In this document: in pieces, positions 3,766 through 63,998 of the stretch
Layout of the letters: each line of letters begins with the position of its first letter
How positions within the stretch are numbered: position 1 is the first letter of the stretch
IMG/VR virus record: IMGVR_UViG_3300020471_000004
Span: 168,693 to 232,692 of that record
Strand: one strand, 5' to 3'
Length of the DNA stretch: 64,000 nucleotides
The notes under the pieces: model-generated
What the model was told of the DNA's origin: nothing
Database searches by the model: none
Seen by the model: only the letters and a program-made list of their open reading frames with translations
Position numbers and translations under genes: made by a program

Positions 3766-3987
3766 ATGTCTAAAGCTTTTTTCAACCCGTTAGACCACGT
3801 AGAAGCTAGTACGGTATCAGCTCCCCAGCAAGGTATAGAGTCTAACTCTAAAGCTATGGTCAATGATGATCCTAGTAAATGTCCCAAATGCAGCGGCGCC
3901 ATGAGTGTAAGTTCTATTTTAGATAGACAGGAATCTGTTTACTACTGTGGTAAATGCCGTGTAACTAACCCTATGTTGGCTGAATAA
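3766..3987 (+). CDS. small zinc-ribbon protein
   Basis: CPKC...CGKC; AAGGAG SD; TAATG coupling to next gene. Confidence 0.7.
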   Translation: MSKAFFNPLDHVEASTVSAPQQGIESNSKAMVNDDPSKCPKCSGAMSVSSILDRQESVYYCGKCRVTNPMLAE

Positions 3988-5858
3988 TGATAAGCATTAA
4001 AAACCGTTACAAGTCTACCGAGACTAGACGGCAACTTGTTACCCACGGAAAGCGCAATCATAGACTTAATGAAAGCGAAACTTTTCGAGAGCGTGACATT
4101 GACCGTCTACAGTCTTTGAGCAAGAGTCAAGGTCTGGCGTCTTTATCTGATGCTACACCTAACGTTGCATCGATGCCTTTGGGTATAGATACAGATCCTT
4201 TAATGGACGGAATGGACTACGATCTTCAAGACAAAGTCCTGTTTAACGTGTATCGAGACATGTACTGGCACGACCCTGTGTGCGGTTCTGCTGTAGACAT
4301 GTTTAGTAGTCTGCCGTTCAGCGAGTTCAGCATAGGCGGAGCTAGCGACAAGTACCTAGACCCGTACCGTGAAGCAATCGAAGTGCTTAACTTGCGTAAT
4401 ATATTTCCTGAAATTGCCACTGACTATAAGGTTACAGGCGGCTTTTGTGGATCTCTTTTGCACAACAGAGAAAACAAAAGATTCATTGACCTTATGTGTC
4501 ACAGAATGGATAGTCTTGAAATAAATCCGCTATTCGCCTACGGACAAGACCCTATTCTTATCTTAGAAATGGACAGACAGCTTAAAAGAACTTTAAGCAT
4601 GGACAGTCCTCGAATAGAGCGATTAAAGAAAAGCGTAGGTGAAGATTTCTTTAACAAGCTTCTTACTGAAAAGCTTGAACTGGATCCTATCGGTACTTTG
4701 TACGTTCCTCGAAAGACCTTTTCAAACTCGTTGCCTACCAGTTACTTTAAACGGGTGCTGCCTATATGGCTTATAGAAAAGAACTTGTACCGAGGTACTC
4801 TTGTAGAGTCAGGACGTAGACAGCGCGGTATCATGCACCTTCAATTAGGTGACGGTGATATGTGGGAACCTAGTGAAGATGACTTTAACCAGATAGCTGC
4901 TATGTTTAACAACGCCGATGCAGACCCAATCGGTGCTATAGTTGCAACTCGTTTAGGTGTAGCTGTAGACGAACTCAGACAAGGCGGTGACTTCTGGAAA
5001 GTTACAGACCTTTGGAACGAAACCACATACGTTAAGATGCGAGCGCTAGGTATATCGGAAGCTTTTCTTTCTGGTGACGCCAGCTATGCAAATATGGAAG
5101 GCTCTTTAACAGTATTCGTAGAGTCTATGCGTACTTTCAGAGACAGTCTTACTCGCCGTATATTTTATTCGAAAGTATTTCCACTAGTATCTATGATGCA
5201 AGGTAATACAATCAATAAGCGCGGTAAGATAATTCAAAAGTCTAATCTTATGGACCAAGACTCCGAAGATATTTTGCGTACCATGAATGACGGAAGTAAG
5301 TTGTTTATTCCTACGGTGCACTGGGCTAAACAGTTGAAACCAGAGGCAGACCAGACTTATATGGAAATGCTTCGCCAGCTTCAAGAGCTAGGTGTACCTG
5401 TTCCATTAAGAGCCCTTGCTGCTGCAGGTGGTTTTAACCTCGACTCGTTGATCAACAACCGCGAAGAAGACCTTGCTTTGCAGAAACAGATCAATGACTA
5501 CAATACAGAGTTAGATAAGCTTAAACCTGCAGGTGCAGAAGGTGAAGAAGACGGAGGTTTCGGAGCATTTGCAAGCGCTGACCGACCGAATGGATTCAAG
5601 AGCCGAGTGTTTGACGGTTACAAGCGTAGACCTACTTTAGGCGAACGTGACTTCGGAGAGTCTAGTGAGATATACACTGTGTCTAAATCAGGACGCAAAA
5701 AGCAACACGTATTCCGACAGGCACATGCTAATGAGGTTGCTAACAACAACATTCATAAAGCTATGCGCAGCTTAGACCCTAAGAAACCTACAACTGTTCA
5801 CTTATTTTCTAGCACAAGTACTAGTAAGAAATCCAAGAAGAATGGAAAAACTATTTGA
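3987..5858 (+). CDS. probable portal protein
   Basis: 623 aa near terL; YRDMYWHDPVCGSAVD and ALGISEAFLSG segments resemble portal motifs. Confidence 0.65.
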   Translation: MISIKNRYKSTETRRQLVTHGKRNHRLNESETFRERDIDRLQSLSKSQGLASLSDATPNVASMPLGIDTDPLMDGMDYDLQDKVLFNVYRDMYWHDPVCGSAVDMFSSLPFSEFSIGGASDKYLDPYREAIEVLNLRNIFPEIATDYKVTGGFCGSLLHNRENKRFIDLMCHRMDSLEINPLFAYGQDPILILEMDRQLKRTLSMDSPRIERLKKSVGEDFFNKLLTEKLELDPIGTLYVPRKTFSNSLPTSYFKRVLPIWLIEKNLYRGTLVESGRRQRGIMHLQLGDGDMWEPSEDDFNQIAAMFNNADADPIGAIVATRLGVAVDELRQGGDFWKVTDLWNETTYVKMRALGISEAFLSGDASYANMEGSLTVFVESMRTFRDSLTRRIFYSKVFPLVSMMQGNTINKRGKIIQKSNLMDQDSEDILRTMNDGSKLFIPTVHWAKQLKPEADQTYMEMLRQLQELGVPVPLRALAAAGGFNLDSLINNREEDLALQKQINDYNTELDKLKPAGAEGEEDGGFGAFASADRPNGFKSRVFDGYKRRPTLGERDFGESSEIYTVSKSGRKKQHVFRQAHANEVANNNIHKAMRSLDPKKPTTVHLFSSTSTSKKSKKNGKTI

Positions 5859-17851: not shown

Positions 17852-18136
17852 TTATAGACCTGCTTCTGAGGCATCAATTGTGCCGTCATCTACTAACTCT
17901 TGTTTACGTCTAACCCAACGCTTTTTGACTTTATCAAAGAAGCTTTTTATTTCTTCTTCGTTGCCTTCAAAAGGTGATTTGTTAAAACCTTCTTCTGCAA
18001 TCAGTCCGCGAAAGAATTTCTGATACTCTTGCTGTAGTACAGATTGCTCTGCACTTTGAGATTCAAGCTTATCTGCTCTGTTTAAGGCACGGTTGCCTAC
18101 AAGGGTTAAGCCGTTAAGATCAAGTTGCGCTTTCAT
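17852..18136 (-). CDS. small probable head-associated protein
   Basis: YQKFF...KSP...KSFFDKV..W resembles a short motif I recall from T4-like head-region proteins; contains ESQSA. Confidence 0.45.
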   Translation of the reverse strand: MKAQLDLNGLTLVGNRALNRADKLESQSAEQSVLQQEYQKFFRGLIAEEGFNKSPFEGNEEEIKSFFDKVKKRWVRRKQELVDDGTIDASEAGL

Positions 18137-18719: not shown

Positions 18720-18952
18720 GACACTCTCACTTTTCCTGTAAACGGGCGCGAGAAAGATATTACCAACGTATTTAGATCTTGATTGACCTGACTCTTAGGT
18801 AATATCTTTTCAAGTTTACCGTCTATACTTACTAGAACATCGCATACAACTTCACGCCCAGAGTTGTGTACCACAGTCCAAGTATCACTAGGTGTGTCTT
18901 GGATGTGGGTATGTCCGTTCTGAATAAAGATTCTTTTACCGTTAATAGGCAT
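18716..18952 (-). CDS. small fibre-associated protein (WTxxHNxG module)
   Basis: TWTVVHNSG...LP...SFS.P.TG. Confidence 0.55.
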   Translation of the reverse strand: MPINGKRIFIQNGHTHIQDTPSDTWTVVHNSGREVVCDVLVSIDGKLEKILPKSQVNQDLNTLVISFSRPFTGKVRVS

Positions 18953-18961
18953 ACAGTCTCC

Positions 18962-19579
18962 TTAGATTGCAATAATCTTACCAGTAGTAGGTGAACTGAA
19001 TTCAACGGTAGCGTTGTTTGTATCTACGTGAAGAATGCTGTGCGGCTGTATTTCATAACCATCAACAATAACACGTATAACAGGTTCATAACCAAGCATG
19101 TGCGGAACATTGACAACAGTTTTGTTATCAAAGGTAACATCAAACCCTATATTAGGTTTAGGAGTCCCGTCAATAGAGCCTAGAAGAACTACAGCTTTAC
19201 CTATCATAGGTGTGTCGTTGAATGAAACAATAGTAGAGTTATTGTCTACTGCTTCAATCTCTGAAGGTATGACAACTTTACCTGTTTCATCAAAACACTG
19301 GACAATAGCGCTGGTGCTGTTCATGTTATGATTAATTGTCCATGTAGCAAGTGCTTCAACCTGTCTGTGTTCATAGGTATAAAGTTCTTGCGTCATAGGA
19401 ATCCAGATAGGCGAATCAGCTAATTCAAGACAAATCATAACACGTTTATCTTTGAATATAAAAGACCCTACTCTAGGTTCTAACGGCCAGTTCTCTACCA
19501 TAGGGAGGGTAACATTGCTTAGGTGGTTACCTAGCAAGTCTAGTCCGCCTAGGTGTTTCGTATTCGAATAATGTCTCAT
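18962..19579 (-). CDS. fibre-associated protein with two HNxG-type modules
   Basis: TWTINHNMN and VNVPHMLG repeats; GGAG SD. Confidence 0.55.
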   Translation of the reverse strand: MRHYSNTKHLGGLDLLGNHLSNVTLPMVENWPLEPRVGSFIFKDKRVMICLELADSPIWIPMTQELYTYEHRQVEALATWTINHNMNSTSAIVQCFDETGKVVIPSEIEAVDNNSTIVSFNDTPMIGKAVVLLGSIDGTPKPNIGFDVTFDNKTVVNVPHMLGYEPVIRVIVDGYEIQPHSILHVDTNNATVEFSSPTTGKIIAI

Positions 19580-19600
19580 GTTTACTCCTACAAGAACGAT

Positions 19601-19623
19601 AAAGAGGGAACCGAAGTTCCCTC
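19601..19623 (-). terminator. Rho-independent terminator, C(UUCG)G loop
   Basis: minus strand reads GAGGGAAC-TTCG-GTTCCCTC-TTT after the 566-aa gene. Confidence 0.75.
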
Positions 19624-19637
19624 AGACCGAATGGCTA

Positions 19638-29687: not shown

Positions 29688-32600
29688 TTAGTTTTTCCTA
29701 TAAAAGCTATCGGTGTTATGTATTAATATAGGATTCTTACCTACATAGTAGCTGTCGTTTTCTTCTATATCTATTATAACAACGTCAATAGGATCTTTAA
29801 CACGTTCAAGAGTTCCTACGTACACTTCACGACCTTGCATATTCCACAAGTAGTCACCGATTTGAATATCTCTTACATCCATCCAATGCCAAGTGTCTTT
29901 ACGCTTTACAAAGATCTCATGCTCTTGTGTTATCTCTACATCGCCGTTTATGACCCAGTACTCTCTGAACCAATCGTGTTTAATACTTGTAACAGTACTG
30001 ATTACCTGACGGTTGCCTTCGGTGCTGGTTGTAGTCCATTCTTGCCAACCAGGAGTATTTTCGTCTATCATACCTGGGAACCAAGTAGATACAACTCTAT
30101 CTCCTACGCGAAGACGCTCTGCGTTGATAGTAGAACCGTCTTCTAGATGGACTAGTGTGCCGAAAGATACGCAGCCTCCACCGCCACCTCCAGAGTATAC
30201 CTGTGCTTTCTGCTGGATAGATACGGGTATAGGGGCACTCTTTTGTACTCCGCCTAAATCGTCTTTGACAAATATCTCTACTTCAAGGCTTGCTGTACCT
30301 GCAAGAGACGAATTGGATACTTCACGCTCGAACTGAATACTTAGGTTCAAGTTGTCAGGACTATAGACGTTATAATTAGATGACCTAGGGTCAGGTTCGT
30401 TATTTACATCGAATGCACAAAAGTTTTTGGTGCTTATTCTAGAACCAGGTATTGTGTTGTTGACAACCGTAACGTTCCACTTGTAGGTATATGTACGATT
30501 AGGGTCAAACTCAAACTGAGCAAGTAAGTTAGTAGAGTGTGCTACACCTGCTGCTTTATCATCGACACCAACCGTAGCGCTATCGGCAGTTTTACGCATA
30601 GTGAATACACTAACGTCACCGGGGCTTTCGGTATACGCGGGAGTACCTTCTCCTAGATCACCGTCTGTGGGCCAAGTCATCTCTAACTTGCTTGCATTTA
30701 TTCTAAACGCCAATATAGTTTCAGGGTGCGCGTACTTTGTAGCAGTCACCTTAGCAGTACCAATACTGGTTATAGCAGAAGTATAAACTATATTCATGTC
30801 ACCGCTAGTAGGAGCGCTAGACTCTACTATTGTTGCGATACCTTCACTGTCTAAAATTTCTCCAGCACTAGGATTAGATATAATAACCTTGAACTGCTCG
30901 TTCGGATCCTTGATGCTGTCTGAATATGTGTTAACGCTTATTGTTCCACTACCTGCACCTGCTGGTATTATTAACGTACCTGATTTAGCTTGGTAGTCTG
31001 CTTCGGTAGTAGGTATGCCTACGTTACCATCGCTGACTGTTTTAACTACCAGATTTGTCATACGAGCCGCATTTGACTGAACAGGGAGTCTAGAGTTAGC
31101 AGTATTCATTCCTGCAAATAAATAACTATCTCCTGCTTTATCAATAATAGCCTGAACACTAATACTATCAATGTTGCTTATACCTGAAACATTTGAAGTT
31201 TCGTTTACTATATTAACAACTGCCTTTAAACCAAACGCATTGATTAGGTCTTTGGCGTTAGCATTCATGTATTTGTATGGACTGCTGTACGTTTTGGTAT
31301 CTAGTGCTGCGGTCTGTACCACAACTACAGGTTCGTTGGACTTTTGTGCTGCCCTAGAAACTGCAATTGCCCAAGCAGTCGCCTGCTCTTTACCAAATAC
31401 TTTGGTACTAAAATCAGTAGCACTTGAAATATCAGAGTTTTCAGCCGCGTGTTGTCTCCACTCTCCCCACTGGTCAATGATAACAATATCGTATCGGTCA
31501 ACAATATCTTTAGGCGTGCTATAAGTACTTGACCCTGTTGTAAAGCCGTTATCTCTAGTTTCACCGTGGTCGCCAAAGTTATTTACAAAGTGAACGTCTA
31601 CTTGAATACCAAATATCTTATTCATGCTAGATACTAAGTGATCCATTCCTTTAGTAGCATGGTAAGCGACTTCATACTCTCTTTCATCTACTCTCGGATC
31701 AGGGTCATAAGGTGTTGCGTATTCAAGTATTCTTTGGTGAGATACAATAAGCATCTTGGTAGAACTTGAAAGTGTGCCTAATCTATTTTCGAAAATATTA
31801 GCAAGCATTTGGAAGTAAGGAGGTAACTCAGAGCGGTTGCTAACACTGTGATCAGTATTGCCTGAGTTATAGTTAGAGGCGTTGTAGTACCCTTGCATGT
31901 AATCAAAGTCATCTAGATCGTATAAACGACTAGGATCTGCCTCAAGAACAAGAGTATAGTTTTGGTTCTCGTCATCGTACACTACCGAACTCACAATCCC
32001 GTCTTGTCTAAACAAAGGATAAGGATTAGTAGAACCTGCAACATCACCTGCGGTACTCAGCGCTGTAATATCTTGTGTGGTGTAGTCAACACTTATGTCC
32101 TGGTCAGTAGGGTAGTTTAAGGCAACTGTGAACTTTGCAGTACTACCTTCGTTAACTCGGATAGAGTTAATGGCGATTTGAACATCAGGACACAACGGTA
32201 CTAACTGGTCATCTATTTCTATATTAAGAATAGGTACGTAACAGCCTACCCAATAAGTCCAGCTAGAATCAAGAGGGCTATCGATTCGGACACTAACGTC
32301 CTCTAAGTCATCAAAGTTAGAGGATTCTTTTAGTCTAAACCACTGTAAGAATGATGTGCCTCTACTTTTCTTGGCTGTTACAAGTTCACCGTTTTTATCA
32401 AACACACTTGCGGTATAGGTAAAATCGCCATAACCTGTTATCTTAATAGACGCAACACCGTCACCGTCAAGGGTATTCATTCGGTAATGGTCTTCGGTAC
32501 TGTAGTGACCTGCACTAGATATGCCAGCTTCTGGCATTTCACAAGGGAATCTGTTCTCTTTGTAGCCTGCTGTGTTAGGGTCGTAAAGCATATACTCCTG

Positions 32601-48810: not shown

Positions 48811-49765
48811 GTATCTCCTTCATAACTATAATTTAAAATCAGTAGGAGGGCACTTGGAAATAGAGCACTATCTTAAAGATGAACTAGGTTTCGAACCTCG
48901 ACCTAGCAACAAAAAAGAACCACCTACACTTCCTTTTCTACCTAACGGTCCCTATCAAGAATTTTTAAGAGGCAAGTGGTCAATCAAATTACTTGACCAC
49001 TTTCTTTTAGAAGAAAGAGTTAAAGTCGGAATAATACTACAGGTAACCATCCGAAAAGAGCCTGTAACACTGTTCAAAGGCTTTATAAACAAAAGCGATA
49101 GTGTTAACCAGCTAAAGCGATTGTTGTTAAGCTGTACTGACCTTCTCTCTGTTTCTGAAATAGATTATCCGTGCGAAAGAGTCAATATAAAATATACAGG
49201 ATCAAATTTTCACGAAAGAGGTTTCATACAGCAGTACTATCTGTGGGATTTCGAAGATTTGCTATCTAGTACGGTACCGCCGGGATTCAATGTATTGGTT
49301 CCAGAGGACATACCTGTAGATGAATGTATAGATTTTATAAACAACTATCTTTTGAATATAGGTAGCCCTAGTGTAGGAAAAGAAAATACTGGACGTATTA
49401 GGACTTTTAACAAAAGCTATATATCCCATTTTAACAGTGTCGGCGTAAACGTTTTGGATATTGATTCTCAAGGCAGAATGTTTATACAAGAAGGTCACGT
49501 AAAAGACACTCGGTACGGACTAAAGGACTCAAGGTCTGTTTATATCGTAAGACAAGCCCTTCTTTCGATAAAGGAAAACCGACAACAGGACACTATAAAC
49601 TTTTTTAAAGAAACAGGACTGGTACGAGACATGATCATAGGGCGTACTATTCACGATGATGTACGCATTTCTTTCTTAGGCACAAACGGTTTCGAAAGCA
49701 CAGAAGTAAATGGGCAGTTAGAAAATCTCGTCAGGTACTTTCGGAGAAAATTCGGAAATTTATGA
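48809..49765 (+). CDS. hypothetical protein
   Basis: long ORF; real start probably the TTG after AGGAGG near 48855. Confidence 0.5.
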   Translation: MYLLHNYNLKSVGGHLEIEHYLKDELGFEPRPSNKKEPPTLPFLPNGPYQEFLRGKWSIKLLDHFLLEERVKVGIILQVTIRKEPVTLFKGFINKSDSVNQLKRLLLSCTDLLSVSEIDYPCERVNIKYTGSNFHERGFIQQYYLWDFEDLLSSTVPPGFNVLVPEDIPVDECIDFINNYLLNIGSPSVGKENTGRIRTFNKSYISHFNSVGVNVLDIDSQGRMFIQEGHVKDTRYGLKDSRSVYIVRQALLSIKENRQQDTINFFKETGLVRDMIIGRTIHDDVRISFLGTNGFESTEVNGQLENLVRYFRRKFGNL

Positions 49766-49992
49766 AAACTACTATAGACAGTTGTATTTACCAACAGCTG
49801 GATATAAATACAATAGATGAAACAAAAAGTCTTCAAGAGCTAGGCGCAGATGAACTTGATTGCGTAGAAATAGCTATGCGGATAGAGATTGCGTTTGGTA
49901 TAGATATATTTGACGAGGACTTTGAGCAATTAAAAACTGTAAACGAACTGTATACCTACGTACAGGACTTAATTGAACGTAAGGAAAAATAA
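49762..49992 (+). CDS. acyl carrier protein homolog lacking the phosphopantetheine Ser
   Basis: SLQELGADELDCVEIAMRIEIAFGIDIFDEDFEQLKTV versus AcpP LGADSLDTVELVMALEEEF. Confidence 0.85.
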   Translation: MKTTIDSCIYQQLDINTIDETKSLQELGADELDCVEIAMRIEIAFGIDIFDEDFEQLKTVNELYTYVQDLIERKEK

Positions 49993-50916: not shown

Positions 50917-51245
50917 CAACTATAAATCTCAAAACCAAGTTTAACCCTGATCTGATAGTGCAAGAGCTAGAGCAGGACACACCTGACTTAGTGCAGCAGA
51001 AAGTTTATGATATTATCAATCTCAAAGAGCAAGGTGTAAGAGACGCATTGCGCAAGCTAGGTTATAGAGAGCCTGATTCTCAAGACAACACAGTAAACCC
51101 TGTAGTTATTGACCATGCCTTGTCTACAATATTGACCGAAAGTCTAAGTCGAGTAGGAGTATCTGCAAACAAAATGCAAATAGACTATGCCTTAAATGCT
51201 CTAGTAGGTTACTTGGCTTCTACACATTGCGTGGTAATAAAATGA
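50913..51245 (+). CDS. hypothetical protein
   Basis: ATGA overlaps on both sides. Confidence 0.55.
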   Translation: MTTINLKTKFNPDLIVQELEQDTPDLVQQKVYDIINLKEQGVRDALRKLGYREPDSQDNTVNPVVIDHALSTILTESLSRVGVSANKMQIDYALNALVGYLASTHCVVIK

Positions 51246-51499
51246 ATAGCATTGAACAAGTGGAAGCCTGTGCCCGAAAGCTACTTTCACAAATGTATAA
51301 TTGCCGAGAGTCTAGTTTAACAGACGGTACAGCTATCGAATCAGAATTCGGAATGGACAGCCTGAGCTTTTTTGAGCTGTTGGTGCAGATGGAAGACTGC
51401 CTTGATATAGAGATAGACGAAAACCGTCTACCCTCTGATTTTATCAGTAAGACTTTTAGAGAACAGATTAATGGAATTGCAAGCAGCATCAGAGTATGA
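51242..51499 (+). CDS. acyl/peptidyl carrier protein with intact Ser
   Basis: FGMDSLSFFELLVQMEDCLDIEI; start taken at the ATGA overlap (51242). Confidence 0.75.
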   Translation: MNSIEQVEACARKLLSQMYNCRESSLTDGTAIESEFGMDSLSFFELLVQMEDCLDIEIDENRLPSDFISKTFREQINGIASSIRV

Positions 51500-56842: not shown

Positions 56843-59254
56843 TTAAAAGATTTGTACGTCACCGTCTAAGCTATATAAGTTAGTAGCTCTTTGGCTTCCT
56901 GCTCCGCGTCTTCCTCGAACAAGTCTATAAAGAATCTCACCGTTCTCGACATCTATGCCTGTTACTTCAACAGGAACAAATGCACGACCTTGCTTTATAG
57001 TATAAATAGGAGTCTGAATAAGTAACGTATTTCGTTTAGAGTATTCACGACTTAGCCTGTTTAGTTGGTTACGCTTTTGAGTAACCAGTGCAGCCTTACC
57101 TGTACTCCTTTCCAGTTCACGTAGTTCTTCAATAAGGCTAGATACCTTTGAAGTTATCGCAGACTTAACTTCAATGTTTTGGCTTATCTTTTTCAAAGCA
57201 TGGCAACGCGCTGTCTTTTCCTTAGGATAAGGTTTCATACGTGTTGCAATAGTAACGCTAATTCTAGGAGCAGAGGTTTCTGCCATGAGATCCATCTTAG
57301 CACCTAAAGCGTTACCGTAAAGCCTTTCCAGTCTACGTGTAAAGTTCTCAGCCTCTTCTATGAACTTCTTGTTCACTGTATCAGTAACCAGAACAAACGC
57401 TGCTTTGCCTGATTTAGTTTTACCAATACGTTGGTCTAACTTGGCAGTTTCTTTGGTGAATATACCTGTTAATGCTTTGTCTACCACAATTGCTTTGCGA
57501 AGCTCTTTCATTATAGAGGTTTCATTGCCAGGGTATACAAAAGCACTAGGTTCCCAATCGTCTTTGTATGCAGGAACTTCCACCGTTTCATCGTATAAAG
57601 TAACACCTTTAGGTAAGTACCCGTCTTTTACTTTACGACCTTCTTTACGTACTGCTGTAACTACAGGTCCTACCAGATAGCCTAGATTGTTCTTGTTAGA
57701 TTTCTCTAAGAAAGAAGCCTTATCACTTGAGTACTTAACAATAGTAGCAGAGCTTGCTAGGTTTGCAAATCTAGGCATAAAACGGTCTAGACGTTGACGT
57801 AGATCTTTTTCAGTAGTGTCCCACATAAACGCATATTTAGGATCGTTTGCATCGTGTCTAAAGAAAGCTACGAATACTGGATCTTTTGTGCGCTTAGTAG
57901 ATGTTTTAGGCTTAACTTCAACAGTTTCGGTGCGCATCTGAGTCAGGCTTTTAACTCCGCGTCTAACTACTTGGTCAATAGCACCATTACCCTTCAGAAG
58001 CTTAACACCTGCTCTGCGTCCTGCAAAACCTTTACTGTTCTTGATCAAAAGCTGTGCTTCTCTTTCTGAAAGAACAAACTCTTCACCATCGTGGTCTTCT
58101 ACCAAGTGTACGCCGTCTTTGTCTAGACGGATACCGAATATTTCACCTGTAGAAATAGTAGTTTCGAATTCAGGATGGTGGTCACGGTAACGTCTGTTGG
58201 TCTTGCCTACATACTTGTACCATGCATATTTGGTATAAACCAATTTCTTGGCGCTTTCTGACAGTAGACCTGTGGTGTGTTTTTGAGGAAATATTTCGCT
58301 GCTGCTTACACTCTCTGCAAAATGGATAGCGGCTTGGCGGGCCTCAGTTTGGTCAGAGATAGTGTATACACCTTGACCTTTAGGAACTTCTTCTACAAAG
58401 TTAAGTTCAGGGCGGTAGTGTCCTGTTTGGTCATGCTGAGGAGAAGTAATAATAAGCTTAAAGCCTTTATCATTCTCTGAGTCTAGGCGAACTTTGTATT
58501 CACGGTCTTCACTGCTATAAAAATTTCGCGCTTGGTCGATAGCTTCTTGTGCGTTAGATGGTCTAAAACCGCAATCGCCTTGTTTTACAGACTGACCTGG
58601 TTTGAAGCCGAACATTGCACGATGCGACCACCCGTACCATTTATTGTCCTTAGAAGAAAAACCTATGCTACAAACACGGCTATTTTCTGAAATAGGCATA
58701 GGTAGTATACCCATATTCTCGCAGATATGTTTAGCATCTTCTGGTGTACCGATATAAACACCTTCAGGGTTATACGCACTGCTCATTGTAAAAGGTTTAC
58801 CTAGTTGCAGGTTTTCGCCTACTTCAACGTATTCTTCTACAGTAGTGTAGTAGCCTTGCTTTAAAGTTGATGTATCTTGTGCTACCGTACGCTTGTACAT
58901 ATTAGGATATTCGGTAGATTCATACCCTTCCAGTTGAGCGGCAAAATCATTTGCAAAATTTTGATGTAGATTCGTAGTTTCGTTAGGTCCTGTTTCATCG
59001 TCCCATTCACTTGTGATGTTGCGACTAGGTTCCCACTGCCAGTTACCTCCAGGCTTACTAGGTATCTTTGTTTCGTTACCGATAGGCTGTAGGTTTTGAG
59101 GATCAAACATTTTATCTTCGCGCTCGATTGTAGATACTTCGCTGTGCGAAATAAATGCTTGCTGTGTTTGGAAATCGAAAAAGTATTGCTTGGTGTTCAT
59201 GCCTGACTCAGACAAAAACATTTCATTTTCAATTAAAGTAAATATATGGTGCAT
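56843..59254 (-). CDS. large multi-segment protein, probable internal head protein
   Basis: start likely MHHIFTL; LSES motifs; KWYGWSHRAMFGF segment; basic C-terminal half. Confidence 0.55.
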   Translation of the reverse strand: MHHIFTLIENEMFLSESGMNTKQYFFDFQTQQAFISHSEVSTIEREDKMFDPQNLQPIGNETKIPSKPGGNWQWEPSRNITSEWDDETGPNETTNLHQNFANDFAAQLEGYESTEYPNMYKRTVAQDTSTLKQGYYTTVEEYVEVGENLQLGKPFTMSSAYNPEGVYIGTPEDAKHICENMGILPMPISENSRVCSIGFSSKDNKWYGWSHRAMFGFKPGQSVKQGDCGFRPSNAQEAIDQARNFYSSEDREYKVRLDSENDKGFKLIITSPQHDQTGHYRPELNFVEEVPKGQGVYTISDQTEARQAAIHFAESVSSSEIFPQKHTTGLLSESAKKLVYTKYAWYKYVGKTNRRYRDHHPEFETTISTGEIFGIRLDKDGVHLVEDHDGEEFVLSEREAQLLIKNSKGFAGRRAGVKLLKGNGAIDQVVRRGVKSLTQMRTETVEVKPKTSTKRTKDPVFVAFFRHDANDPKYAFMWDTTEKDLRQRLDRFMPRFANLASSATIVKYSSDKASFLEKSNKNNLGYLVGPVVTAVRKEGRKVKDGYLPKGVTLYDETVEVPAYKDDWEPSAFVYPGNETSIMKELRKAIVVDKALTGIFTKETAKLDQRIGKTKSGKAAFVLVTDTVNKKFIEEAENFTRRLERLYGNALGAKMDLMAETSAPRISVTIATRMKPYPKEKTARCHALKKISQNIEVKSAITSKVSSLIEELRELERSTGKAALVTQKRNQLNRLSREYSKRNTLLIQTPIYTIKQGRAFVPVEVTGIDVENGEILYRLVRGRRGAGSQRATNLYSLDGDVQIF

Positions 59255-59419
59255 ACAAAGTCCATTAATCAGTTGGTACAGGCGGATTGCCTTAGTAGTC
59301 AGGCCCGAGTAGCTTGCAAGTAAACTTCTAAAGTATTGCAAGCTTTTAATATTTGTTCGGTGATTATTTCACCTTTTTACCGTAGAGTGCATTTTAACAT
59401 TACCGAATACGCGCACAAG

Positions 59420-59905
59420 CTAGTCCTCTTTTGTAGGGACGTCAAACAGCGCTCTTTCGCTATGCTCCATTATGTATGCAAGTCTACTGAATTCAGCAAT
59501 GTATTTGTTTTTAAGTAAATCTTTTTCAGGCACTCTCATACCTATGTAGTAAGACTTAGGCTTCCAGTCTACGTTACACCATTCGTGTACTCTTCCTTTG
59601 TGTACATTAAAGCTATGCTGCATAAGGTCCCAACGTCCTTTAGAGTCTTTGAATACATAGTATCCGATATAAACGTCTTGACCTGCGGCTTTGTGAACAG
59701 TGGTAGCGTATTTGGTAGTATCTGTAGCAGGATATTTAGCTACTCTTTTACCTTTAGGTATAATAGGTAACTTGTAAAGTCGCGCACGGATATCCTGCAT
59801 GTGGCTGTAACGTTTTTCTAAACTATCAATAACGTCCGCAGGTAAAGCAAGCGGCTTAGGATGCTTAGATACACTTTCGCTTATTAAGTCTAGAATAATT
59901 TCCAT
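59420..59905 (-). CDS. probable virion (head) protein
   Basis: start MEIILDLISES coupled to the tmk stop. Confidence 0.5.
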   Translation of the reverse strand: MEIILDLISESVSKHPKPLALPADVIDSLEKRYSHMQDIRARLYKLPIIPKGKRVAKYPATDTTKYATTVHKAAGQDVYIGYYVFKDSKGRWDLMQHSFNVHKGRVHEWCNVDWKPKSYYIGMRVPEKDLLKNKYIAEFSRLAYIMEHSERALFDVPTKED

Positions 59906-60579
59906 TAGCGTACCTTTGTTAGAACCCAATTAAGTACGGTAGCAGTTACTTCATCAGGTTCTTTATCAGAAGTATCAACATACAAGTGGTTAGACTCTGT
60001 TATCAGCTCCCTCACCTTAAAGCTAGACAAAGCAGTTCGGTATGCCTCTGAAAGTCGGTCACCGTCATCAAAAGCTTTTTCGATTTGGTCATCTGTGCTG
60101 TCTTGTGCCTGCCTTTCATTGTTAGCAATAGCGAGTTGTTTACGCTTGTGTGCGTTTTGACCGTCTACATCTAGAATGATGTAGTTTACCTGGATGCCTG
60201 CCTGTTTAAATCTATTAAACAAATATTTGCGAGAAGCAAAGAAGAGTTCGTAAAGATCACTCTTGGTATAAATGCACTGGTAAGCATAGGTAGATAAATC
60301 AAACCTGTCTGTTACCCAAACCCGGCTAGAGTCTTGGCTTGACTGTACCATGCGATCAACAAGCAGCGCTCTAGAAAACCACATACCAAAGAACATGCTA
60401 GTGTTATCTACAGGATTGGTTTTTAGAAAAGTTCTAACCTGCTCTCCGAATTCTGTTCCGCCAGGCTCCCGAAACATTGCTGTGTTGTACTTTAAGCCAG
60501 TCAGAGTCTGGTGTATCGCCTCTGCGCATCCTGATTTACCTGAATATTCAGGTCCTTCTACTACAAAAATCTGTTTCAT
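59905..60579 (-). CDS. tmk: thymidylate kinase
   Basis: VEGPEYSGKS P-loop, REPGG, DRF..STYAYQ, ILDVD. Confidence 0.9.
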   Translation of the reverse strand: MKQIFVVEGPEYSGKSGCAEAIHQTLTGLKYNTAMFREPGGTEFGEQVRTFLKTNPVDNTSMFFGMWFSRALLVDRMVQSSQDSSRVWVTDRFDLSTYAYQCIYTKSDLYELFFASRKYLFNRFKQAGIQVNYIILDVDGQNAHKRKQLAIANNERQAQDSTDDQIEKAFDDGDRLSEAYRTALSSFKVRELITESNHLYVDTSDKEPDEVTATVLNWVLTKVR

Positions 60580-61241
60580 TATTCAAACCACGCATGTTCT
60601 GCACTGATAGTACGCTCAGGGCCTAGCTTTTTAGTATTAGGATCCTCTATACGTACTTTTATTTTCTTACCGCTGAAGTCAACACCAATAAGCATACCTT
60701 GATATTGCTTATTAGGGCCTATTAAAATTGTTTTGTTAAAGTTCGACTGTGCCGAGCGAGTCTTTTTAGGATTGAAGTAAATAGACTTCAAATTCTCTGC
60801 ACGTTTAATATGTGCAATACACCATTCGCGAGCCTGTTTGACAAAATCATCAGGTATGCGGTAAATGTCTAGGTTACAAAGAAAAGCCTGAATAGCAGGT
60901 TCTTTATCTTCAAACATATAACTCATAGGTTCTGCAAGTTTAGGGCTTGAACGGGTCACCATGTAACGACTTGAGCCTAATCGGTTTAAAGTAGTAACAC
61001 TATTAGAAAGTTTGCTCTTGTACGTCAATCGATACAGTTTGTTAGCATCTGAACCTGTGTCATTAGAGTCTAGCAACCAAGAAAGGCTTACATTACCAAA
61101 CTGAGTGTTGTCTATAGGTATAGGACTACCTTCACGCTGCGCTCTCTTTTTTCCGAAAGTTCTTACATAGCTGCTCTTTGGTCTTATCGCTGAACTAGAT
61201 GCAAGCTCTTTGGCTTTAGATAAGTTTATAAATATTCGCAT
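60579..61241 (-). CDS. basic protein, probable head protein
   Basis: MRIFINLS...LASSSA leader; AAGGT SD. Confidence 0.55.
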   Translation of the reverse strand: MRIFINLSKAKELASSSAIRPKSSYVRTFGKKRAQREGSPIPIDNTQFGNVSLSWLLDSNDTGSDANKLYRLTYKSKLSNSVTTLNRLGSSRYMVTRSSPKLAEPMSYMFEDKEPAIQAFLCNLDIYRIPDDFVKQAREWCIAHIKRAENLKSIYFNPKKTRSAQSNFNKTILIGPNKQYQGMLIGVDFSGKKIKVRIEDPNTKKLGPERTISAEHAWFE

Positions 61242-61274
61242 AACTGTACCTTATATTGCTATGCAGTTAAATTA

Positions 61275-61625
61275 TTACCACAGATCTTTTAGCGCCCAAT
61301 AGGCTGCTTGAAACTTGTCTTTATAAGCCGGTGTTCCATCTTTCTTTAGGATAGCTTTGTGGCGTTTATGATATCTGTCTCTACGATCTTTATCCTTGTG
61401 CGTAGTGTAATCTTCGTAGTCTTTGTTACCATACTTTACAAGTTTGAATCGATTACCTTTCTTAGCAAGCACACAACGCTTGTGTTTAGAGCCAGTAGGA
61501 TTGTCTATTGGTTTATTCCAAGCTGTAAACTTCATTCCTTTATACTCTAACTTCTTACCGTTTTTTGTAACCTTATCTAAGGGTTGCCCTTCGGAATCTC
61601 CGCTTAGACTTAGGAATATTTTCAT
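61275..61625 (-). CDS. small basic protein (DUF5754-like)
   Basis: LVKYG..DYEDYTTHKD..RR.RY..RH...AAYWA...LW. Confidence 0.55.
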   Translation of the reverse strand: MKIFLSLSGDSEGQPLDKVTKNGKKLEYKGMKFTAWNKPIDNPTGSKHKRCVLAKKGNRFKLVKYGNKDYEDYTTHKDKDRRDRYHKRHKAILKKDGTPAYKDKFQAAYWALKDLW

Positions 61626-62388
61626 AAAGTTGCTCTCTATTTCGTTTCTTTTGAATAGACATTTGCACAGCAGGATCCTTTAGGCGTTGTTTGTAGCTGC
61701 TTGAAGGAAACTTTTTCAAGTACTCTGCTTGCTGGTGTGCATCAAAGGTATAAAGAAAAGTATTTTCATCAACACTTGCGTCAAACTTGTAATCGTCTCT
61801 AAGTACGATTCCGCCTTTATGCGGGTTAAGGTTAGCAACACACAGACCGCCTCGCCAGGCAAGTTTGGTAATTAACCATCTGCGTTTATCCCCTGCAACT
61901 TTACGTCTTCGGGCACTTACCTTATTGTTTAACCAAACTTTAAGTTCTTTCTTGCCGTCCACTACTTGAATAGTAGGCTCTACTTTGTTGTTGCTGTCTA
62001 GACTTGTATATTTATAGGTCAGTACTAACAGTCCAACTTTGTGTTCCTTGCATTGGTCTACAATGAATTGACCTTTATCAGATTCATAAAGCCATTCAGG
62101 AATACAAAAATACATTTTGTTGCAGTAATCTAAATAGCTAGTCCATTTGGAATCTGAGGCGAAGTCTGCCCAGCAGCTTTTTACTTCCGTGAATATTATT
62201 TCACCTTTCATGTTGATAGCAACAAGGTCAGCCCTTGCACCTTTAACTTTTGATACGCCAACTTCTTGGTAAACTGAAAAATTCTTGGCAGCAAAGTAGC
62301 GTACACATGCTTCTGTACTCTTTGCTGTTATTTCTTTTCGTCCGAATATCTTTTGGATATTAACAGACTTGTTCTTTTTATCTGTCAT
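61573..62388 (-). CDS. mmcB: MmcB-family PD-(D/E)XK nuclease
   Basis: EV...RADLVA..KGEI...EVKS..ADF.SD.KW..YLDYC...YF. Confidence 0.8.
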   Translation of the reverse strand: MTDKKNKSVNIQKIFGRKEITAKSTEACVRYFAAKNFSVYQEVGVSKVKGARADLVAINMKGEIIFTEVKSCWADFASDSKWTSYLDYCNKMYFCIPEWLYESDKGQFIVDQCKEHKVGLLVLTYKYTSLDSNNKVEPTIQVVDGKKELKVWLNNKVSARRRKVAGDKRRWLITKLAWRGGLCVANLNPHKGGIVLRDDYKFDASVDENTFLYTFDAHQQAEYLKKFPSSSYKQRLKDPAVQMSIQKKRNREQLYENIPKSKRRFRRATLR

Positions 62389-62407
62389 ACATACAAATTA
62401 GCGTAGG

Positions 62408-62821
62408 CTAACCTGCACGAACAACGTAGACTATTCGAACATCGTTCGTGACTTGATCAAGAGGGAGATAGCCGATAGCGCCTTCATAAGAAGTGACATA
62501 ATCTACTAACTCGCTAGGTCGATCGGCTACGTAAGGGCTTCGGTGAGAATCGATATACAAAATTTTAGACCATATACTTAGCAGTTGCGAGGCTTCTAGC
62601 TCAAGAACTTGAGTATTGAACCTATTAAATACCAGAGGGTCACCAAGTACTGCAACCTTAACAGGAAGATCTATAGTTCTGTAGGTAAGAAGTTCCCCTT
62701 TAAATATTCTAGATATATCCTTTTTAGATATTCGAGAATAGTTCTTTATATTTACGATAACCGCTATGTCTGAGGCAAAACAAGGAACGCACATAAACAA
62801 AAGTATAAACAGAAACTTCAT
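62408..62821 (-). CDS. short exported PBP2-type substrate-binding-like protein
   Basis: signal peptide; AVIVN, I.RIFKG, W, V...GAIGYLP. Confidence 0.65.
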   Translation of the reverse strand: MKFLFILLFMCVPCFASDIAVIVNIKNYSRISKKDISRIFKGELLTYRTIDLPVKVAVLGDPLVFNRFNTQVLELEASQLLSIWSKILYIDSHRSPYVADRPSELVDYVTSYEGAIGYLPLDQVTNDVRIVYVVRAG

Positions 62822-62829
62822 AAGTATCC

Positions 62830-63285
62830 TTAATTACGAATAGGCTCTACGTACTCTCCGGAAACTTCAATCTTTTGCCCTACTATATCTTTCAATCTCA
62901 TAAAGTTTCGCTCTTCTTGTGCGCTAGGTTGGTACTTGATAGAAACGTGAGGCTCGAAGGTAGGGTAGCTGTGATTGAAACCGAAGGTTTTCTTTATTGC
63001 GGCGTGTCTGCGCGTCAGTTGAGGACAGTGTAACTTTAGAACAAGGGCTCTCCATTTATCGCCTGGCTTTCCGAATACATCTATTCCTGATACAGTAGCC
63101 TTGTAAGTACGGTCAGGGCGGCAGCAGCTTTTATACCTATGAATAAGGTCGTTGTCTTTGTCATACATCAAAGTCAGGTGCATATCAGGAATCAAGTTAT
63201 CAAAATAACCGTTGTAGAAGTCTGTTAGTCGCTGTACGCTAAAAGGTTGTACGCGAAGTCCTATGTAGGTGCCAAGTTCCATCAA
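62830..63285 (-). CDS. acb1: 2H phosphoesterase, anti-CBASS Acb1 (T4 57B)-like
   Basis: GTY near N-terminus, HLTLMY, LVLKL...L..RH, HSYPTFEPHVSI.Y, GEYVEP. Confidence 0.75.
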   Translation of the reverse strand: MMELGTYIGLRVQPFSVQRLTDFYNGYFDNLIPDMHLTLMYDKDNDLIHRYKSCCRPDRTYKATVSGIDVFGKPGDKWRALVLKLHCPQLTRRHAAIKKTFGFNHSYPTFEPHVSIKYQPSAQEERNFMRLKDIVGQKIEVSGEYVEPIRN

Positions 63286-63659
63286 AAGTCCTCAAATTTG
63301 CCGACATGTATTGTTTCTAGTTCAATATCTATATGACCAGGTCTATACAGAATTCTTTCAGGTGTAGGTTTACCTGATTGTTTGTGCTGTAAAGAATCGT
63401 AAAGAACTTCTGTTCCGCTCGGATCAAGTACTACCATGTGAGTAGGGCTTTTGTCTTTAATTCTGCTAGGTTTCAAGAGAGCATATTTTAGTTTCTTGCT
63501 AGGATACTTCTTTGCAAAGTTAATTGCATTAGAGTAGCAACTGTTTTTGGCTACTTCTTTTCCGTTCCAAACATCCTGTAACCACAGAATTCTGTCAATA
63601 GGTTTCATGTAAGACTCTGAAATAAGAGCAGAATCTTTACAAGATATTAATATTCGCAT
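63282..63659 (-). CDS. probable head protein, possible Cys-His-Asp fold
   Basis: MRILIS...LISES leader; NSCY.NA...HMVV...YD. Confidence 0.45.
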   Translation of the reverse strand: MRILISCKDSALISESYMKPIDRILWLQDVWNGKEVAKNSCYSNAINFAKKYPSKKLKYALLKPSRIKDKSPTHMVVLDPSGTEVLYDSLQHKQSGKPTPERILYRPGHIDIELETIHVGKFEDF

Positions 63660-63701: not shown

Positions 63702-63998
63702 TTACGAAAAAGCTACGTCTAAATCAGTAGTAGAGTATTCGCGAGAATCAACAAAACCGCCAAGTAGTTTCATATCAGCGTCTGACTCTTCATCGCCTAC
63801 AGTACCTAAATACGATACGTTGGATATTTCTGCTAGAGTAGGTAAGTCTGATTCTGTAACAACATTAGAACCTATATTTCTGTCTAATACCAAGAAAGCA
63901 AACCAAGTAGGCGTGCCTTCATCTATTTGTCTGAACAGTTCTAAACTTTCGCTTAGAGGCCACTGAACAAAGTTATAGTTCGGGAATCGAGGCTGCAT
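63702..63998 (-). CDS. hypothetical protein, possibly truncated by the window edge
   Basis: ORF reaches the end of the window. Confidence 0.4.
   Translation of the reverse strand: MQPRFPNYNFVQWPLSESLELFRQIDEGTPTWFAFLVLDRNIGSNVVTESDLPTLAEISNVSYLGTVGDEESDADMKLLGGFVDSREYSTTDLDVAFS

What the first reader, a model, noticed from the sequence alone, without database searches (positions are those of the whole stretch)
56843..63659. Shared N-terminal leader plus S-x-S motif on unrelated proteins: candidate capsid-targeting and prohead-protease signal
Seen: MRIFINLS..LASSSA (61241), MKIFLSLSG (61625), MRILIS..LISESY (63659), MEIILDLISESV (59905), MHHIFTL..FLSESG plus internal LLSESA (59254); also MKAQLDL..LESQSA (18136) and LQSLS..LASLSD near the portal N-terminus. 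The enzymes interleaved in this block (Tmk, MmcB, Acb1) lack it. Established: T4 and phiKZ-like internal head proteins have propeptides cut by the prohead protease after Glu. Inference: an analogous system with a hydrophobic-S-x-S specificity marks cargo that is packaged and injected.
Basis: partly seen in the sequence, partly recalled or inferred. Interest (0 to 1): 0.6.

Follow-up and report, generated by a model that had tools for sequence, protein, structure and literature searches.

The report
Shared capsid-cargo leader in a jumbo phage
About two dozen unrelated proteins of this jumbo phage, several of them anti-defence proteins, start with the same short peptide tag, which most likely sends them into the phage head and is then cut off by the head-maturation protease.

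Summary
The window is the last 64 kb of a 232.7-kb jumbo phage of the Lu11/PaBG/NCTB group. Every quoted N-terminus is present. Genome-wide, 18 of 267 proteins carry hydrophobic-S-[LIVE]-S in their first 15-18 residues (about 2 expected; 0 in C-terminal windows). Serine codons switch between AGY and TCN, so the signal is a peptide, not DNA. Orthologues in NCTB, JA29, PaBG and Lu11 keep a leader while its sequence drifts. GC-richer Lu11 and PaBG use A-x-A (MKIQLAVA), so the rule is hydrophobic-small-x-small.

Cargo includes a Tad6 fusion, DarA_C, NUDIX, topoisomerase IB and KMPT-N proteins. The leader genes surround a head-maturation protease with the T4 gp21/assemblin fold, whose own N-terminus carries S-x-S. 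A scaffold-like protein has a nearly invariant internal copy. Two leader-type PaBG proteins are published virion components. Phage G's homologous capsid protein is cut after A-L-A.

Best reading: a T4-CTS-like propeptide with small-residue rather than Glu specificity. Cleavage, packaging and injection remain untested. It is a new variant of a known kind.

The parts
56843..59254 (-). 803-aa cargo protein: N-terminal leader, Tad6 (anti-Thoeris) domain, internal leader-like site, KMPT-N domain, C-terminal part of unknown function
   Evidence: Pfam Tad6 PF25188 1.1e-39 (136 bits, cut-off 27) at aa 132-317; KMPT-N at aa 343-407 scores 27.2 bits, just under its cut-off of 28.9. NCTB orthologue of 823 aa at 37.5% identity supports the ATG at 59254.
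59204..59254 (-). Leader of the 803-aa protein (aa 1-17, ends FLSES)
   Evidence: The NCTB orthologue ends its leader with LCSES followed by G, as here.
58253..58270 (-). Internal GLLSES (aa 329-334) just in front of the KMPT-N domain: candidate internal cleavage site
   Evidence: Homologous to the N-terminal MLISLSA and MLISESA plus KMPT-N of two other proteins of the genome (blastp). LLSESAKK is identical in the NCTB orthologue.
58304..58861 (-). Tad6 domain of the 803-aa protein
   Evidence: Tad6 proteins bind ThsB of type I Thoeris (PMC13728456).
59420..59905 (-). 161-aa cargo of unknown function; leader aa 1-11 (nt 59873-59905, MEIILDLISES)
   Evidence: Orthologues in NCTB, PaBG (gp86) and Lu11 (gp202) align only from about aa 21, yet each carries its own leader ending in small-x-small. 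Atlas structure matches cover residues 21-161 only.
59905..60579 (-). Thymidylate kinase, no leader
   Evidence: Pfam PF02223 2.8e-15. In PaBG and Lu11, Tmk sits next to the orthologue of the 161-aa leader-bearing protein, which sits next to the topoisomerase IB.
60579..61241 (-). 220-aa cargo of unknown function; leader aa 1-17 (nt 61191-61241, ends LASSS)
   Evidence: The NCTB orthologue aligns from aa 22 and has its own leader ending FVSES.
61275..61625 (-). 116-aa DUF5754 protein; compact leader aa 1-8 (nt 61602-61625, MKIFLSLS)
   Evidence: Pfam DUF5754 4e-9. The start overlaps the MmcB-like gene by 53 nt; Met31 is an alternative start.
61573..62388 (-). MmcB-like nuclease-fold protein, no leader
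   Evidence: Pfam PF06319 4.2e-15. Same neighbourhood in PaBG (gp88).
62408..62821 (-). 137-aa protein with an N-terminus that looks like a classical Sec signal peptide; a contrast to the leader
   Evidence: The N-terminus MKFLFILLFMCVPCFAS has a long hydrophobic core. No signal-peptide predictor was run. Weak PBP_like_2 match.
62830..63285 (-). Acb1 (anti-CBASS phosphodiesterase family), no leader here
   Evidence: Pfam Acb1 PF23474 2e-15. An Acb1 homologue next to the protease of a 293-kb metagenomic relative does start with a leader (MKPIHISLSA; L077:10967-11506).
63282..63659 (-). 125-aa cargo of unknown function; leader aa 1-16 (nt 63612-63659, ends LISES)
   Evidence: The NCTB orthologue begins MLASMLISIS.
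17852..18136 (-). 94-aa protein with a long leader (aa 1-28, nt 18053-18136, MKAQLDL...LESQS)
   Evidence: The NCTB orthologue keeps MKMQLNL...LESQS; JA29 has MKTVVALA...LSA.
3987..5858 (+). Portal protein with two S-x-S motifs at aa 44-54 (nt 4116-4148)
   Evidence: tblastn to annotated portal proteins. The aligned position reads GLMSTS in NCTB, ILATAA in Lu11 and EATAG in PaBG. This is weak evidence, because small-x-small is a low-information motif.

Best explanation
The leader is an N-terminal propeptide that works like the capsid-targeting sequence of the T4 internal proteins.

It has two overlapping parts. The first is an alternating hydrophobic start, M-(K)-h-x-h. The second is a site h-[S/A]-x-[S/A]. 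In the compact form the two merge, as in MKIFLSLS or MLISLS.

Proteins that carry it are made from the late and structural gene blocks and are recruited into the assembling prohead. They are then trimmed by the phage's gp21/assemblin-fold head-maturation serine protease (genome 31414-32217, outside the window). That protease probably also cuts itself, the scaffold-like protein and the major capsid protein at sites of the same kind. The trimmed cargo stays in the head and enters the next host with the DNA. The cargo includes a Tad6 fusion, DarA_C, NUDIX, topoisomerase IB, KMPT-N proteins, a 1934-aa protein and small proteins of unknown function.

Shown: the peptide-level motif, its enrichment, its conservation, its linkage to the protease gene, and the fold of the protease.

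From the literature: virion presence of two PaBG leader-type proteins, and cleavage of the phage G capsid protein after A-L-A.

Inferred: cleavage exactly after the second small residue, targeting by the leader, and injection.
For: (1) Enrichment and peptide-level selection.

(2) Orthologues keep a leader although it is not alignable. The 161-aa cargo reads MEIILDLISES here..LSSLSLS in NCTB..LASLSMS in PaBG and MKLYLTTASA in Lu11. Topoisomerase IB reads MLVSLS, MLITLS, MHTSLSA and MNVHIAVAAA. Among 150 representatives of the topoisomerase family, many start with ..hS[LIV]SAV.

(3) Lu11 has 12 or more clustered genes starting MKIQLA[VTIL]A next to Tmk and topoisomerase IB, and their starts agree with GenBank.

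(4) The protease matches phrog_18299 'head maturation protease' at 1.5e-92. The AF2 model has pLDDT 86.5. VIA-align gives Z 10.0 to T4 gp21 (5jbl), and 6.1 and 4.8 to VZV and HCMV assemblins. BFVD hits are prohead proteases, including those of PaBG, phiRSL1 and phage G gp19. The gene lies inside the leader-gene cluster. The family's N-terminus carries S-x-S-F.

(5) The scaffold-like 659-aa protein next to the capsid gene has a nearly invariant h-x-S-x-S straight after its acidic run, across 66 homologues.

(6) The PaBG virion proteome contains gp83 (starts MLIKINLLEAVAA, encoded close to the topoisomerase gene) and gp202 (..LNSLSAAID). gp202 appears to be the counterpart of this phage's 1934-aa protein (..GLESSSAAID), judged from its similar length and matching N-terminal ..S-x-S-A-A-I-D motif; the pairing was not printed as an orthologue hit. 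PaBG virion proteins are also processed (PMC7412058).

(7) The phage G capsid protein goes from 282 to 255 aa by N-terminal sequencing (PMC5646251). That places the cut after V-A-L-A (sequence from L074). It is a homologue of this phage's capsid protein.

(8) The internal LLSESAKK at a domain junction of the Tad6 fusion is conserved in NCTB.

(9) Cargo types fit injected proteins: DarA_C, and phrog_1926 'released from the phage upon host infection'.

(10) An Acb1 homologue carries the tag in a relative but not here, which suggests the tag is portable.
Against: No mass-spectrometric or Edman N-terminus exists for any leader-bearing protein of this phage group, so removal of the leader is unproven.

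Small-x-small is a low-information motif, so the proposed sites in the capsid protein and the portal could be chance. Three candidate sites exist in the first 100 aa of the capsid protein.

The internal LLSES may be conserved as part of the KMPT-N domain rather than as a cleavage site.

The known proteases of this fold that serve T4 and phiKZ cut after Glu. About a third of the leaders here have E at the x position, which allows a different register (I-S-E|S).

Some regex hits are false: the 668-aa protein at genome 5864-7870, whose orthologues lack the motif, and the paralogue family at genome 46-52 kb.

The complex prediction could not be run.
Confidence: 0.6

Rival explanations
1. The leader is a packaging or docking tag that is not cut. 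Its short beta-strand-like peptide binds the scaffold, the capsid interior or the portal and stays on the mature protein. The S-x-S is then part of the binding epitope.
For: The compact leaders are only 6-8 residues long with an alternating hydrophobic pattern. The P1 DarB N-terminal packaging signal shows that targeting can be separated from cleavage (PMC9024508). In T4, targeting and processing map to different residues of the CTS (PMC9026906).
Against: The same motif occurs internally and is nearly invariant in the scaffold-like protein. It also occurs in the protease's own N-terminus and at a domain junction of the Tad6 fusion. An N-terminal docking tag would not be needed at those places. 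Phage G cuts its capsid protein at a site of this type.
Confidence: 0.15
2. The leader is removed by the co-encoded KMPT-N/HExxH metallopeptidase (genome 27881-28819), in the head or after ejection. This would follow the self-processing proposed for polyvalent injected proteins. The serine protease would not be involved.
For: A protein with a KMPT-N-like region (similarity from blastp and phrog_36535, not Pfam) and an HELAH motif lies in the cargo cluster. PaBG encodes a SprT-like protein with a leader-like start in the same neighbourhood. Pfam names KMPT-N as a metallopeptidase-fusion domain.
Against: BLAST finds orthologues of the metallopeptidase only in NCTB and JA29, whereas the leader occurs in all five phages. 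The motif sits in the core head-assembly proteins that prohead serine proteases normally process. The serine protease is a core gene with 231 close homologues.
Confidence: 0.08
3. The motif has nothing to do with the virion. It would be a translation-start or N-terminal stability feature (for example favourable early codons, or an N-terminal recognition signal for a cytoplasmic factor) shared by a temporal class of genes.
For: MK starts with A/U-rich codons are common in highly expressed phage genes. Three leader genes (genome 113-127 kb) lie on the plus strand, away from the head module.
Against: Synonymous codon variation, including AGY versus TCN, argues against an RNA-level signal. PaBG gp83 and gp202 are virion proteins. 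The motif also occurs internally in head-assembly proteins. The genes cluster around the protease in five genomes and in metagenomic contigs.
Confidence: 0.07
4. Chance, shared ancestry of an N-terminal domain, or a DNA repeat at gene starts.
For: Three proteins share the KMPT-N domain directly after the motif.
Against: Apart from the KMPT-N set and one paralogue pair, the leader proteins show no pairwise similarity. Enrichment far exceeds the shuffled controls. Codons differ.
Confidence: 0.02

Closest known systems
T4 capsid-targeting sequence (CTS) of internal proteins IPI-III, processed by prohead protease gp21
   Same: A short N-terminal peptide (10 aa in T4) shared by otherwise unrelated, fast-evolving head-internal proteins, some of them anti-restriction proteins. 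The protease has the same fold (Z 10.0 to 5jbl). The protease carries its own motif near its N-terminus. Targeting and processing determinants overlap within one peptide (PMC9026906).
   Different: The T4 motif ends in Glu (L/I-x-E). Here both key positions are small residues (S or A) and Glu is only an optional middle residue. The leader sequence is unrelated to MKTYQEFIAE. The phage group, the capsid protein (HK97-type, 359 aa) and the cargo set are different.
phiKZ / 201phi2-1 / SPN3US head-protein propeptides cut at S/A(/G)-x-E by gp175/gp245
   Same: A jumbo phage with many head and ejection proteins that carry propeptides. There is a small residue at P3. Multiple sites occur per precursor (PMC9026906; PMC10052503 and PMC7411985, listed).
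   Different: P1 is Glu in those phages. Their propeptides are often long and differ from one another, whereas here a compact common leader exists. This phage belongs to the Lu11/PaBG/NCTB ('Lupandier') group, which is separate from the phiKZ-like phages (PMC7412058).
Phage P1 Dar system (DarA, DarB, Hdf and others) with the DarB N-terminal packaging signal
   Same: Anti-restriction proteins built into the head during morphogenesis and delivered with the DNA. One cargo here has a DarA_C domain. In P1, an N-terminal signal of fewer than 30 aa suffices for packaging (PMC9024508).
   Different: No shared leader motif across the cargo is known in P1. The P1 capsid protein is cut after Glu120. Sequence similarity of the signals was not tested.
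Herpesvirus assemblin and phage G capsid maturation (small residue at P1)
   Same: Proteases of the same fold. Assemblins cut (V/L/I)-x-A|S (my own knowledge). The phage G capsid protein is cut after V-A-L-A. So small-residue specificity has precedent within the fold and within a homologous capsid system.
   Different: No portable cargo leader has been described for them. Assemblin substrates are scaffold proteins only.

Membership tests
T4-type CTS / prohead-protease propeptide system | A short N-terminal peptide shared by otherwise unrelated proteins of one phage | tested here: met
   18 proteins against 2.2 expected. No pairwise similarity beyond the leader, except the KMPT-N set.
T4-type CTS / prohead-protease propeptide system | The phage encodes a prohead serine protease of the gp21/assemblin fold | tested here: met
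   phrog_18299 at 1.5e-92. Z 10.0, rmsd 3.1 over 148 residues to 5jbl. Invariant H131 and S188. Pfam S77 itself gave no match.
T4-type CTS / prohead-protease propeptide system | Cleavage after Glu in L/I-x-E | tested here: not met
   Most leaders have no Glu (ISLS, and LAVA in Lu11). Glu appears only at the variable middle position.
T4-type CTS / prohead-protease propeptide system | Leader-bearing proteins are present in virions | tested here: inconclusive
   Literature only, and only for a relative: PaBG gp83 and gp202 are in the virion proteome (PMC7412058). There are no data for this phage.
T4-type CTS / prohead-protease propeptide system | The leader is removed in the mature virion and is sufficient to package a foreign protein | not testable with these tools
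   Needs N-terminomics and reporter fusions.
phiKZ-like S/A/G-x-E propeptides | Glu at P1 | tested here: not met
   As above. The phage is also outside the phiKZ-like groups (portal and capsid relatives).
Sec signal peptide cut by signal peptidase I (A-x-A rule) | A hydrophobic core of about 10-15 residues between a basic n-region and the small-x-small site | tested here: not met
   Leaders are 6-17 aa with alternating rather than continuous hydrophobic residues. The 137-aa protein at 62408-62821, which starts with a long hydrophobic core and looks like a Sec signal peptide, differs clearly (no predictor was run).
Tad6 (type I Thoeris inhibitor), for the 803-aa cargo | Match to Pfam PF25188 above its curated cut-off | tested here: met
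   136.2 bits against a cut-off of 27, profile positions 6-145 of 145.
Tad6 (type I Thoeris inhibitor), for the 803-aa cargo | Binds ThsB and blocks its active site | not testable with these tools
   Function known from PMC13728456; not assayed here. The domain sits in an 803-aa fusion rather than a protein the length of the 145-position Pfam profile (no other Tad6 protein sizes were examined).
P1 Dar-type head-internal anti-restriction proteins | DarA-family domain in a head-module gene | tested here: met
   DarA_C PF18789 at 1.7e-7 (32 bits, cut-off 27) in the 157-aa leader protein at genome 25280-25753. phrog_1926 'released from the phage upon host infection'.

The most novel reading that the evidence does not exclude
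The 6-8-residue protease-recognition peptide is itself the whole packaging signal. Cargo would be captured by docking to the still-inactive maturation protease (or to the scaffold) in the prohead core, and released inside the head when the protease fires.

Because the tag is so short, it moves freely between genes (Acb1 with or without it; a Tad6 fusion). These phages could therefore keep re-equipping their injected first-strike arsenal.

The tag would let one read the injected proteome of hundreds of uncultivated jumbo phages directly from sequence. It would also give a minimal handle for loading foreign proteins into large capsids.
Probability: 0.3. Interest if true: 0.75.

Novelty: new variant of a known kind. 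Interest (0 to 1): 0.62.

Why it matters
If the leader marks head-packaged cargo, one could list the proteins that a jumbo phage delivers together with its DNA from sequence alone. Here that list would include an anti-Thoeris Tad6 fusion, a DarA-type protein, a NUDIX hydrolase, a type IB topoisomerase, a 1934-aa protein and several proteins of unknown function.

This bears on an open question: which anti-defence proteins act before any phage gene is expressed. The Lu11/PaBG/NCTB group has cultured members, and the protease family has 231 close homologues in public data.

It would also show that gp21-fold prohead proteases have evolved a small-residue specificity, coupled to a common cargo tag. 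And it would offer a very short tag for loading proteins into T=27-class capsids.

Tried and rejected
1. A DNA or RNA motif at gene starts. Rejected: the codons for the conserved Ser and Leu differ between genes, including AGY versus TCN.

2. A T4-like register I-S-E|S. It fits only the ISES and LSES leaders, not ISLS, SSS, SGS or the Lu11 LAVA leaders. Small-x-small covers all of them.

3. The HslV/proteasome-like peptidase (window 13507-14250) as the maturation enzyme. Rejected: it has no orthologue in NCTB, JA29, PaBG or Lu11.

4. Pfam scans of the genome for Peptidase_S77, S78, S49 and ClpP were all empty. The protease was found only through PHROGs and by its fold.

5. The word-based protein search with the 161-aa cargo returned only itself, and the search for related loci found nothing. 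These blanks say little, because local BLAST against the fetched genomes found orthologues.

6. My first EM motif runs failed. One timed out and one locked onto Met1. The corrected run gave a clear motif only for this genome and Lu11 and was diffuse for JA29, NCTB and PaBG.

7. Topoisomerase homologues with N-terminal extensions were checked for an internal site at the junction. The result was mixed and is not used as evidence.

8. The phiRSL1 head region shows no obvious leaders in the nine ORFs read.

9. Capsid-protein sites at aa 30-34 and aa 86-88 are compatible with the motif but are not distinguishable from chance. The site aligned with the phage G cut (A-L-G|A, about aa 100) is the best guess.

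No verdict.

11. Atlas leads for the 161-aa cargo (YunG-like) and the 220-aa cargo (KOW-like) are weak.

12. The PDB sequence search and the Pfam scan of the scaffold-like protein gave nothing useful.

Full report
**What the window is.** The window is the last 64 kb of a linear 232,692-bp virus record, estimated 93% complete. The portal (3987-5858) is 74% identical to that of Phage NCTB. It is about 51% identical to the portals of Dickeya JA-phages, Erwinia pEa_SNUABM phages and a Yersinia phage. The capsid protein finds the same set plus Lu11, PaBG and, more distantly, BcepSauron, phiRSL1 and Bacillus phage G. This is the 'Lupandier' group of jumbo myoviruses defined in PMC7412058. I fetched the whole genomes of JA29, NCTB, PaBG and Lu11. 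I called genes in all five with one simple caller. Where I compared my starts with GenBank annotation (Lu11 and PaBG), they agree.

**The observation.** Tmk, the MmcB-like protein and Acb1 indeed lack the leader. Genome-wide, [LIVMF]S[LIVE]S occurs 18 times in the first 15 residues against 2.2 expected (p 3e-11). Shuffled N-termini reach 7 at most. The last 18 residues give 0 hits and residues 41-58 give 4. An unsupervised EM search recovers L-I-S-L-S-E. Typical starts outside the window are MLISLS, MLVSLS, MKLLISLS, MLISES, MKINLDLSSES, MIITLNSES and MKAQISLS. The Ser codons of the motif come from both codon boxes and the Leu codons vary. So the conserved thing is a peptide and not a nucleic-acid signal. 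Apart from three proteins that share a KMPT-N domain and one paralogue pair, the carriers are unrelated.

**Conservation.** JA29 and NCTB show the same enrichment, each with 13 proteins against about 2.5-2.8 expected. JA29 uses M-[EQKH]-h-x-[VIF]-S-[LI]-S. Lu11 has a run of at least a dozen genes that start MKIQLA[VTIL]A. PaBG has ..LLEAVAA..NEALAG, MELAIAS and ..LASLSMS.

For the same orthologous protein the leader region does not align, yet a leader is always there:
- The 161-aa cargo of the window has four different leaders in four phages.
- So does topoisomerase IB.
- So do the KMPT-N proteins and the NUDIX protein.

Among 150 representatives of the topoisomerase family at 25-47% identity, many begin with ..h-S-[LIV]-S-A-V.

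The three AT-richer genomes use S-x-S (17:1, 13:2 and 13:3 over A-x-A). The two GC-richer genomes use A-x-A (14:4 and 15:5). This swing is larger than the change in overall Ser and Ala content. The common rule is therefore hydrophobic-small-x-small. An alternating hydrophobic start (residues 3 and 5) is statistically linked to such a site further on, with odds ratios of 4.1, 4.6 and 3.0 in this genome, JA29 and Lu11. That fits a two-part leader whose parts merge in the compact form.

**What carries it.**

In the window:
- An 803-aa protein with a Tad6 anti-Thoeris domain and a KMPT-N domain (the KMPT-N match, 27.2 bits, is just under Pfam's cut-off of 28.9).
- A DUF5754 protein.
- Three proteins of unknown function, of 161, 220 and 125 aa.
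- A 94-aa protein with a long leader.

Elsewhere in the genome:
- A DarA_C protein that also matches a PHROG described as released from the phage upon infection.
- A type IB topoisomerase.
- Two KMPT-N proteins.
- A NUDIX hydrolase.
- A 1934-aa protein.
- Several proteins of unknown function.

In a 293-kb metagenomic relative, an Acb1 homologue next to the protease starts MKPIHISLSA. So the tag can be present or absent on the same kind of enzyme.

**Link to head maturation.** The leader genes of genome 13.9-42 kb surround a 267-aa core gene (31414-32217). It matches the PHROG 'head maturation protease' at 1.5e-92. Its AlphaFold model (pLDDT 86.5) superposes on T4 gp21 with Z 10.0, and on the herpesvirus assemblins with Z 6.1 and 4.8. 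It also hits many predicted prohead proteases in BFVD. The family has 231 close homologues, with invariant His131 and Ser188 and a Cys3-His cluster. Its N-termini almost always contain S-x-S-F, much as gp21 carries its own motif (PMC9026906).

Next to the capsid gene (18747-19826) lies a 659-aa protein with two zinc ribbons and a long acidic run. In 66 homologues the acidic run is followed by a nearly invariant h-x-S-x-S, for example LESDS, FDSES or LTLSVSS. The Tad6 fusion has an internal LLSESAKK exactly in front of its KMPT-N domain. This is identical in NCTB although the proteins are only 37.5% identical. In PaBG and Lu11, Tmk lies beside the 161-aa orthologue, which lies beside the topoisomerase gene; in PaBG the MmcB-like gene is there too and the block adjoins the capsid module.

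**Outside evidence.** The PaBG virion proteome lists gp83 and gp202 (PMC7412058). gp83 is the 320-aa protein encoded close to the topoisomerase gene and starts with a leader. gp202 starts ..LNSLSAAID. It appears to be the counterpart of this phage's 1934-aa protein, which starts ..GLESSSAAID; I infer this from the similar length and the matching N-terminal motif, not from a printed orthologue hit. The same paper reports proteolytic processing of virion proteins and a capsid protein about 20% lighter after maturation. For phage G, N-terminal sequencing gives a mature capsid protein of 255 of 282 residues (PMC5646251). In the sequence, this puts the cut after V-A-L-A. The aligned position here is A-L-G|A, which is conserved in all five phages. 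Herpesvirus assemblins, of the same fold, cut after Ala (my own knowledge).

**Mechanism and its limits.** The best reading is a T4-CTS-like propeptide. It would recruit cargo to the prohead and then be removed by the gp21-fold protease after the second small residue. The trimmed cargo would remain for delivery with the DNA.

Steps shown: the motif, its conservation, its genomic linkage and the protease fold.

Steps taken from the literature on relatives: virion presence, and one cleavage site of this type.

Steps inferred: the exact cut, targeting by the leader, and injection.

Small-x-small is too weak a motif to assign sites in the capsid protein or the portal with confidence. The internal LLSES could be part of the KMPT-N fold. 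An uncut docking tag, or processing by the co-encoded HExxH peptidase, remain possible. I found no paper in the library that describes this leader.

**Verdict.** This is a real feature that recurs across the five genomes and the metagenomic relatives examined. It works like the T4 and phiKZ propeptide systems but does not meet their defining Glu specificity, and its leader sequence is unrelated to the T4 CTS. It is a new variant of a known kind, of good interest to phage biologists, and directly testable in cultured relatives.

Noticed in passing
window 13507-14250 (+): A 247-aa HslV/proteasome-beta-like peptidase (Pfam Proteasome 24.8 bits; phrog_1040 'peptidase HslV family') that starts MTT, as expected for an N-terminal Thr nucleophile. 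It has no orthologue in NCTB, JA29, PaBG or Lu11.
   Followed up: partly
window 56843-63285: The block reads as an anti-defence islet, holding a Tad6 domain (anti-Thoeris) and Acb1 (anti-CBASS). The Tad6 domain sits in an 803-aa leader-bearing fusion rather than a protein the length of the 145-position Pfam profile.
   Followed up: partly
window 63702-63998 (-) and the record ends: The last ORF is cut by the end of the record; its NCTB orthologue is 175 aa. Comparison with NCTB suggests that roughly 13-16 kb are missing between the two ends of this linear record, which fits the 93% completeness estimate.
   Followed up: partly
window 61573-61625: The leader-bearing start of the 116-aa DUF5754 ORF overlaps the 3' end of the MmcB-like gene by 53 nt in another frame. 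An in-frame Met31 would avoid the overlap but lacks the leader.
   Followed up: no
G000:C1:20620-22599 (L039:1121-3100, minus strand): A 659-aa protein between the cargo genes and the capsid gene, with two CxxC...CPSC zinc ribbons, a roughly 100-residue Asp/Glu run and a conserved C-terminal domain. It is labelled 'ATPase' in PHROGs and in RefSeq relatives, but no ATPase motif or Pfam match was seen. It looks like a scaffold, so the label is probably wrong.
   Followed up: partly
G000:C1:25761-27434 (L031:5761-7434, minus strand): A type IB topoisomerase (Pfam Topoisom_I 1e-19) with the leader, so it is probably carried in the virion. This recalls the topoisomerase IB packaged in poxvirus particles (my own knowledge). 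948 relatives were found at E up to 0.001.
   Followed up: partly
G000:C1:27881-28819 (L031:7881-8819, minus strand): A 312-aa protein with a KMPT-N-like region and an HELAH metallopeptidase motif inside the cargo cluster. It starts MKIDV but has no S-x-S.
   Followed up: partly
G000:C1:15511-17130 and 57317-58963: Two tail-sheath paralogues (phrog_23 at 6.5e-85 and 3.5e-81), matching the two-component sheath reported for PaBG.
   Followed up: no
window 49762-49992 and 51242-51499 (+): Two small ORFs (76 and 85 aa) whose sequences look like acyl-carrier proteins (..GMDSLS.. in the second). They were not scanned against any family library.
   Followed up: no
window 62408-62821 (-): A 137-aa protein with an N-terminus that looks like a classical Sec signal peptide and a weak periplasmic-binding-protein-like match, lying between cytoplasmic anti-defence genes.
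   Followed up: no
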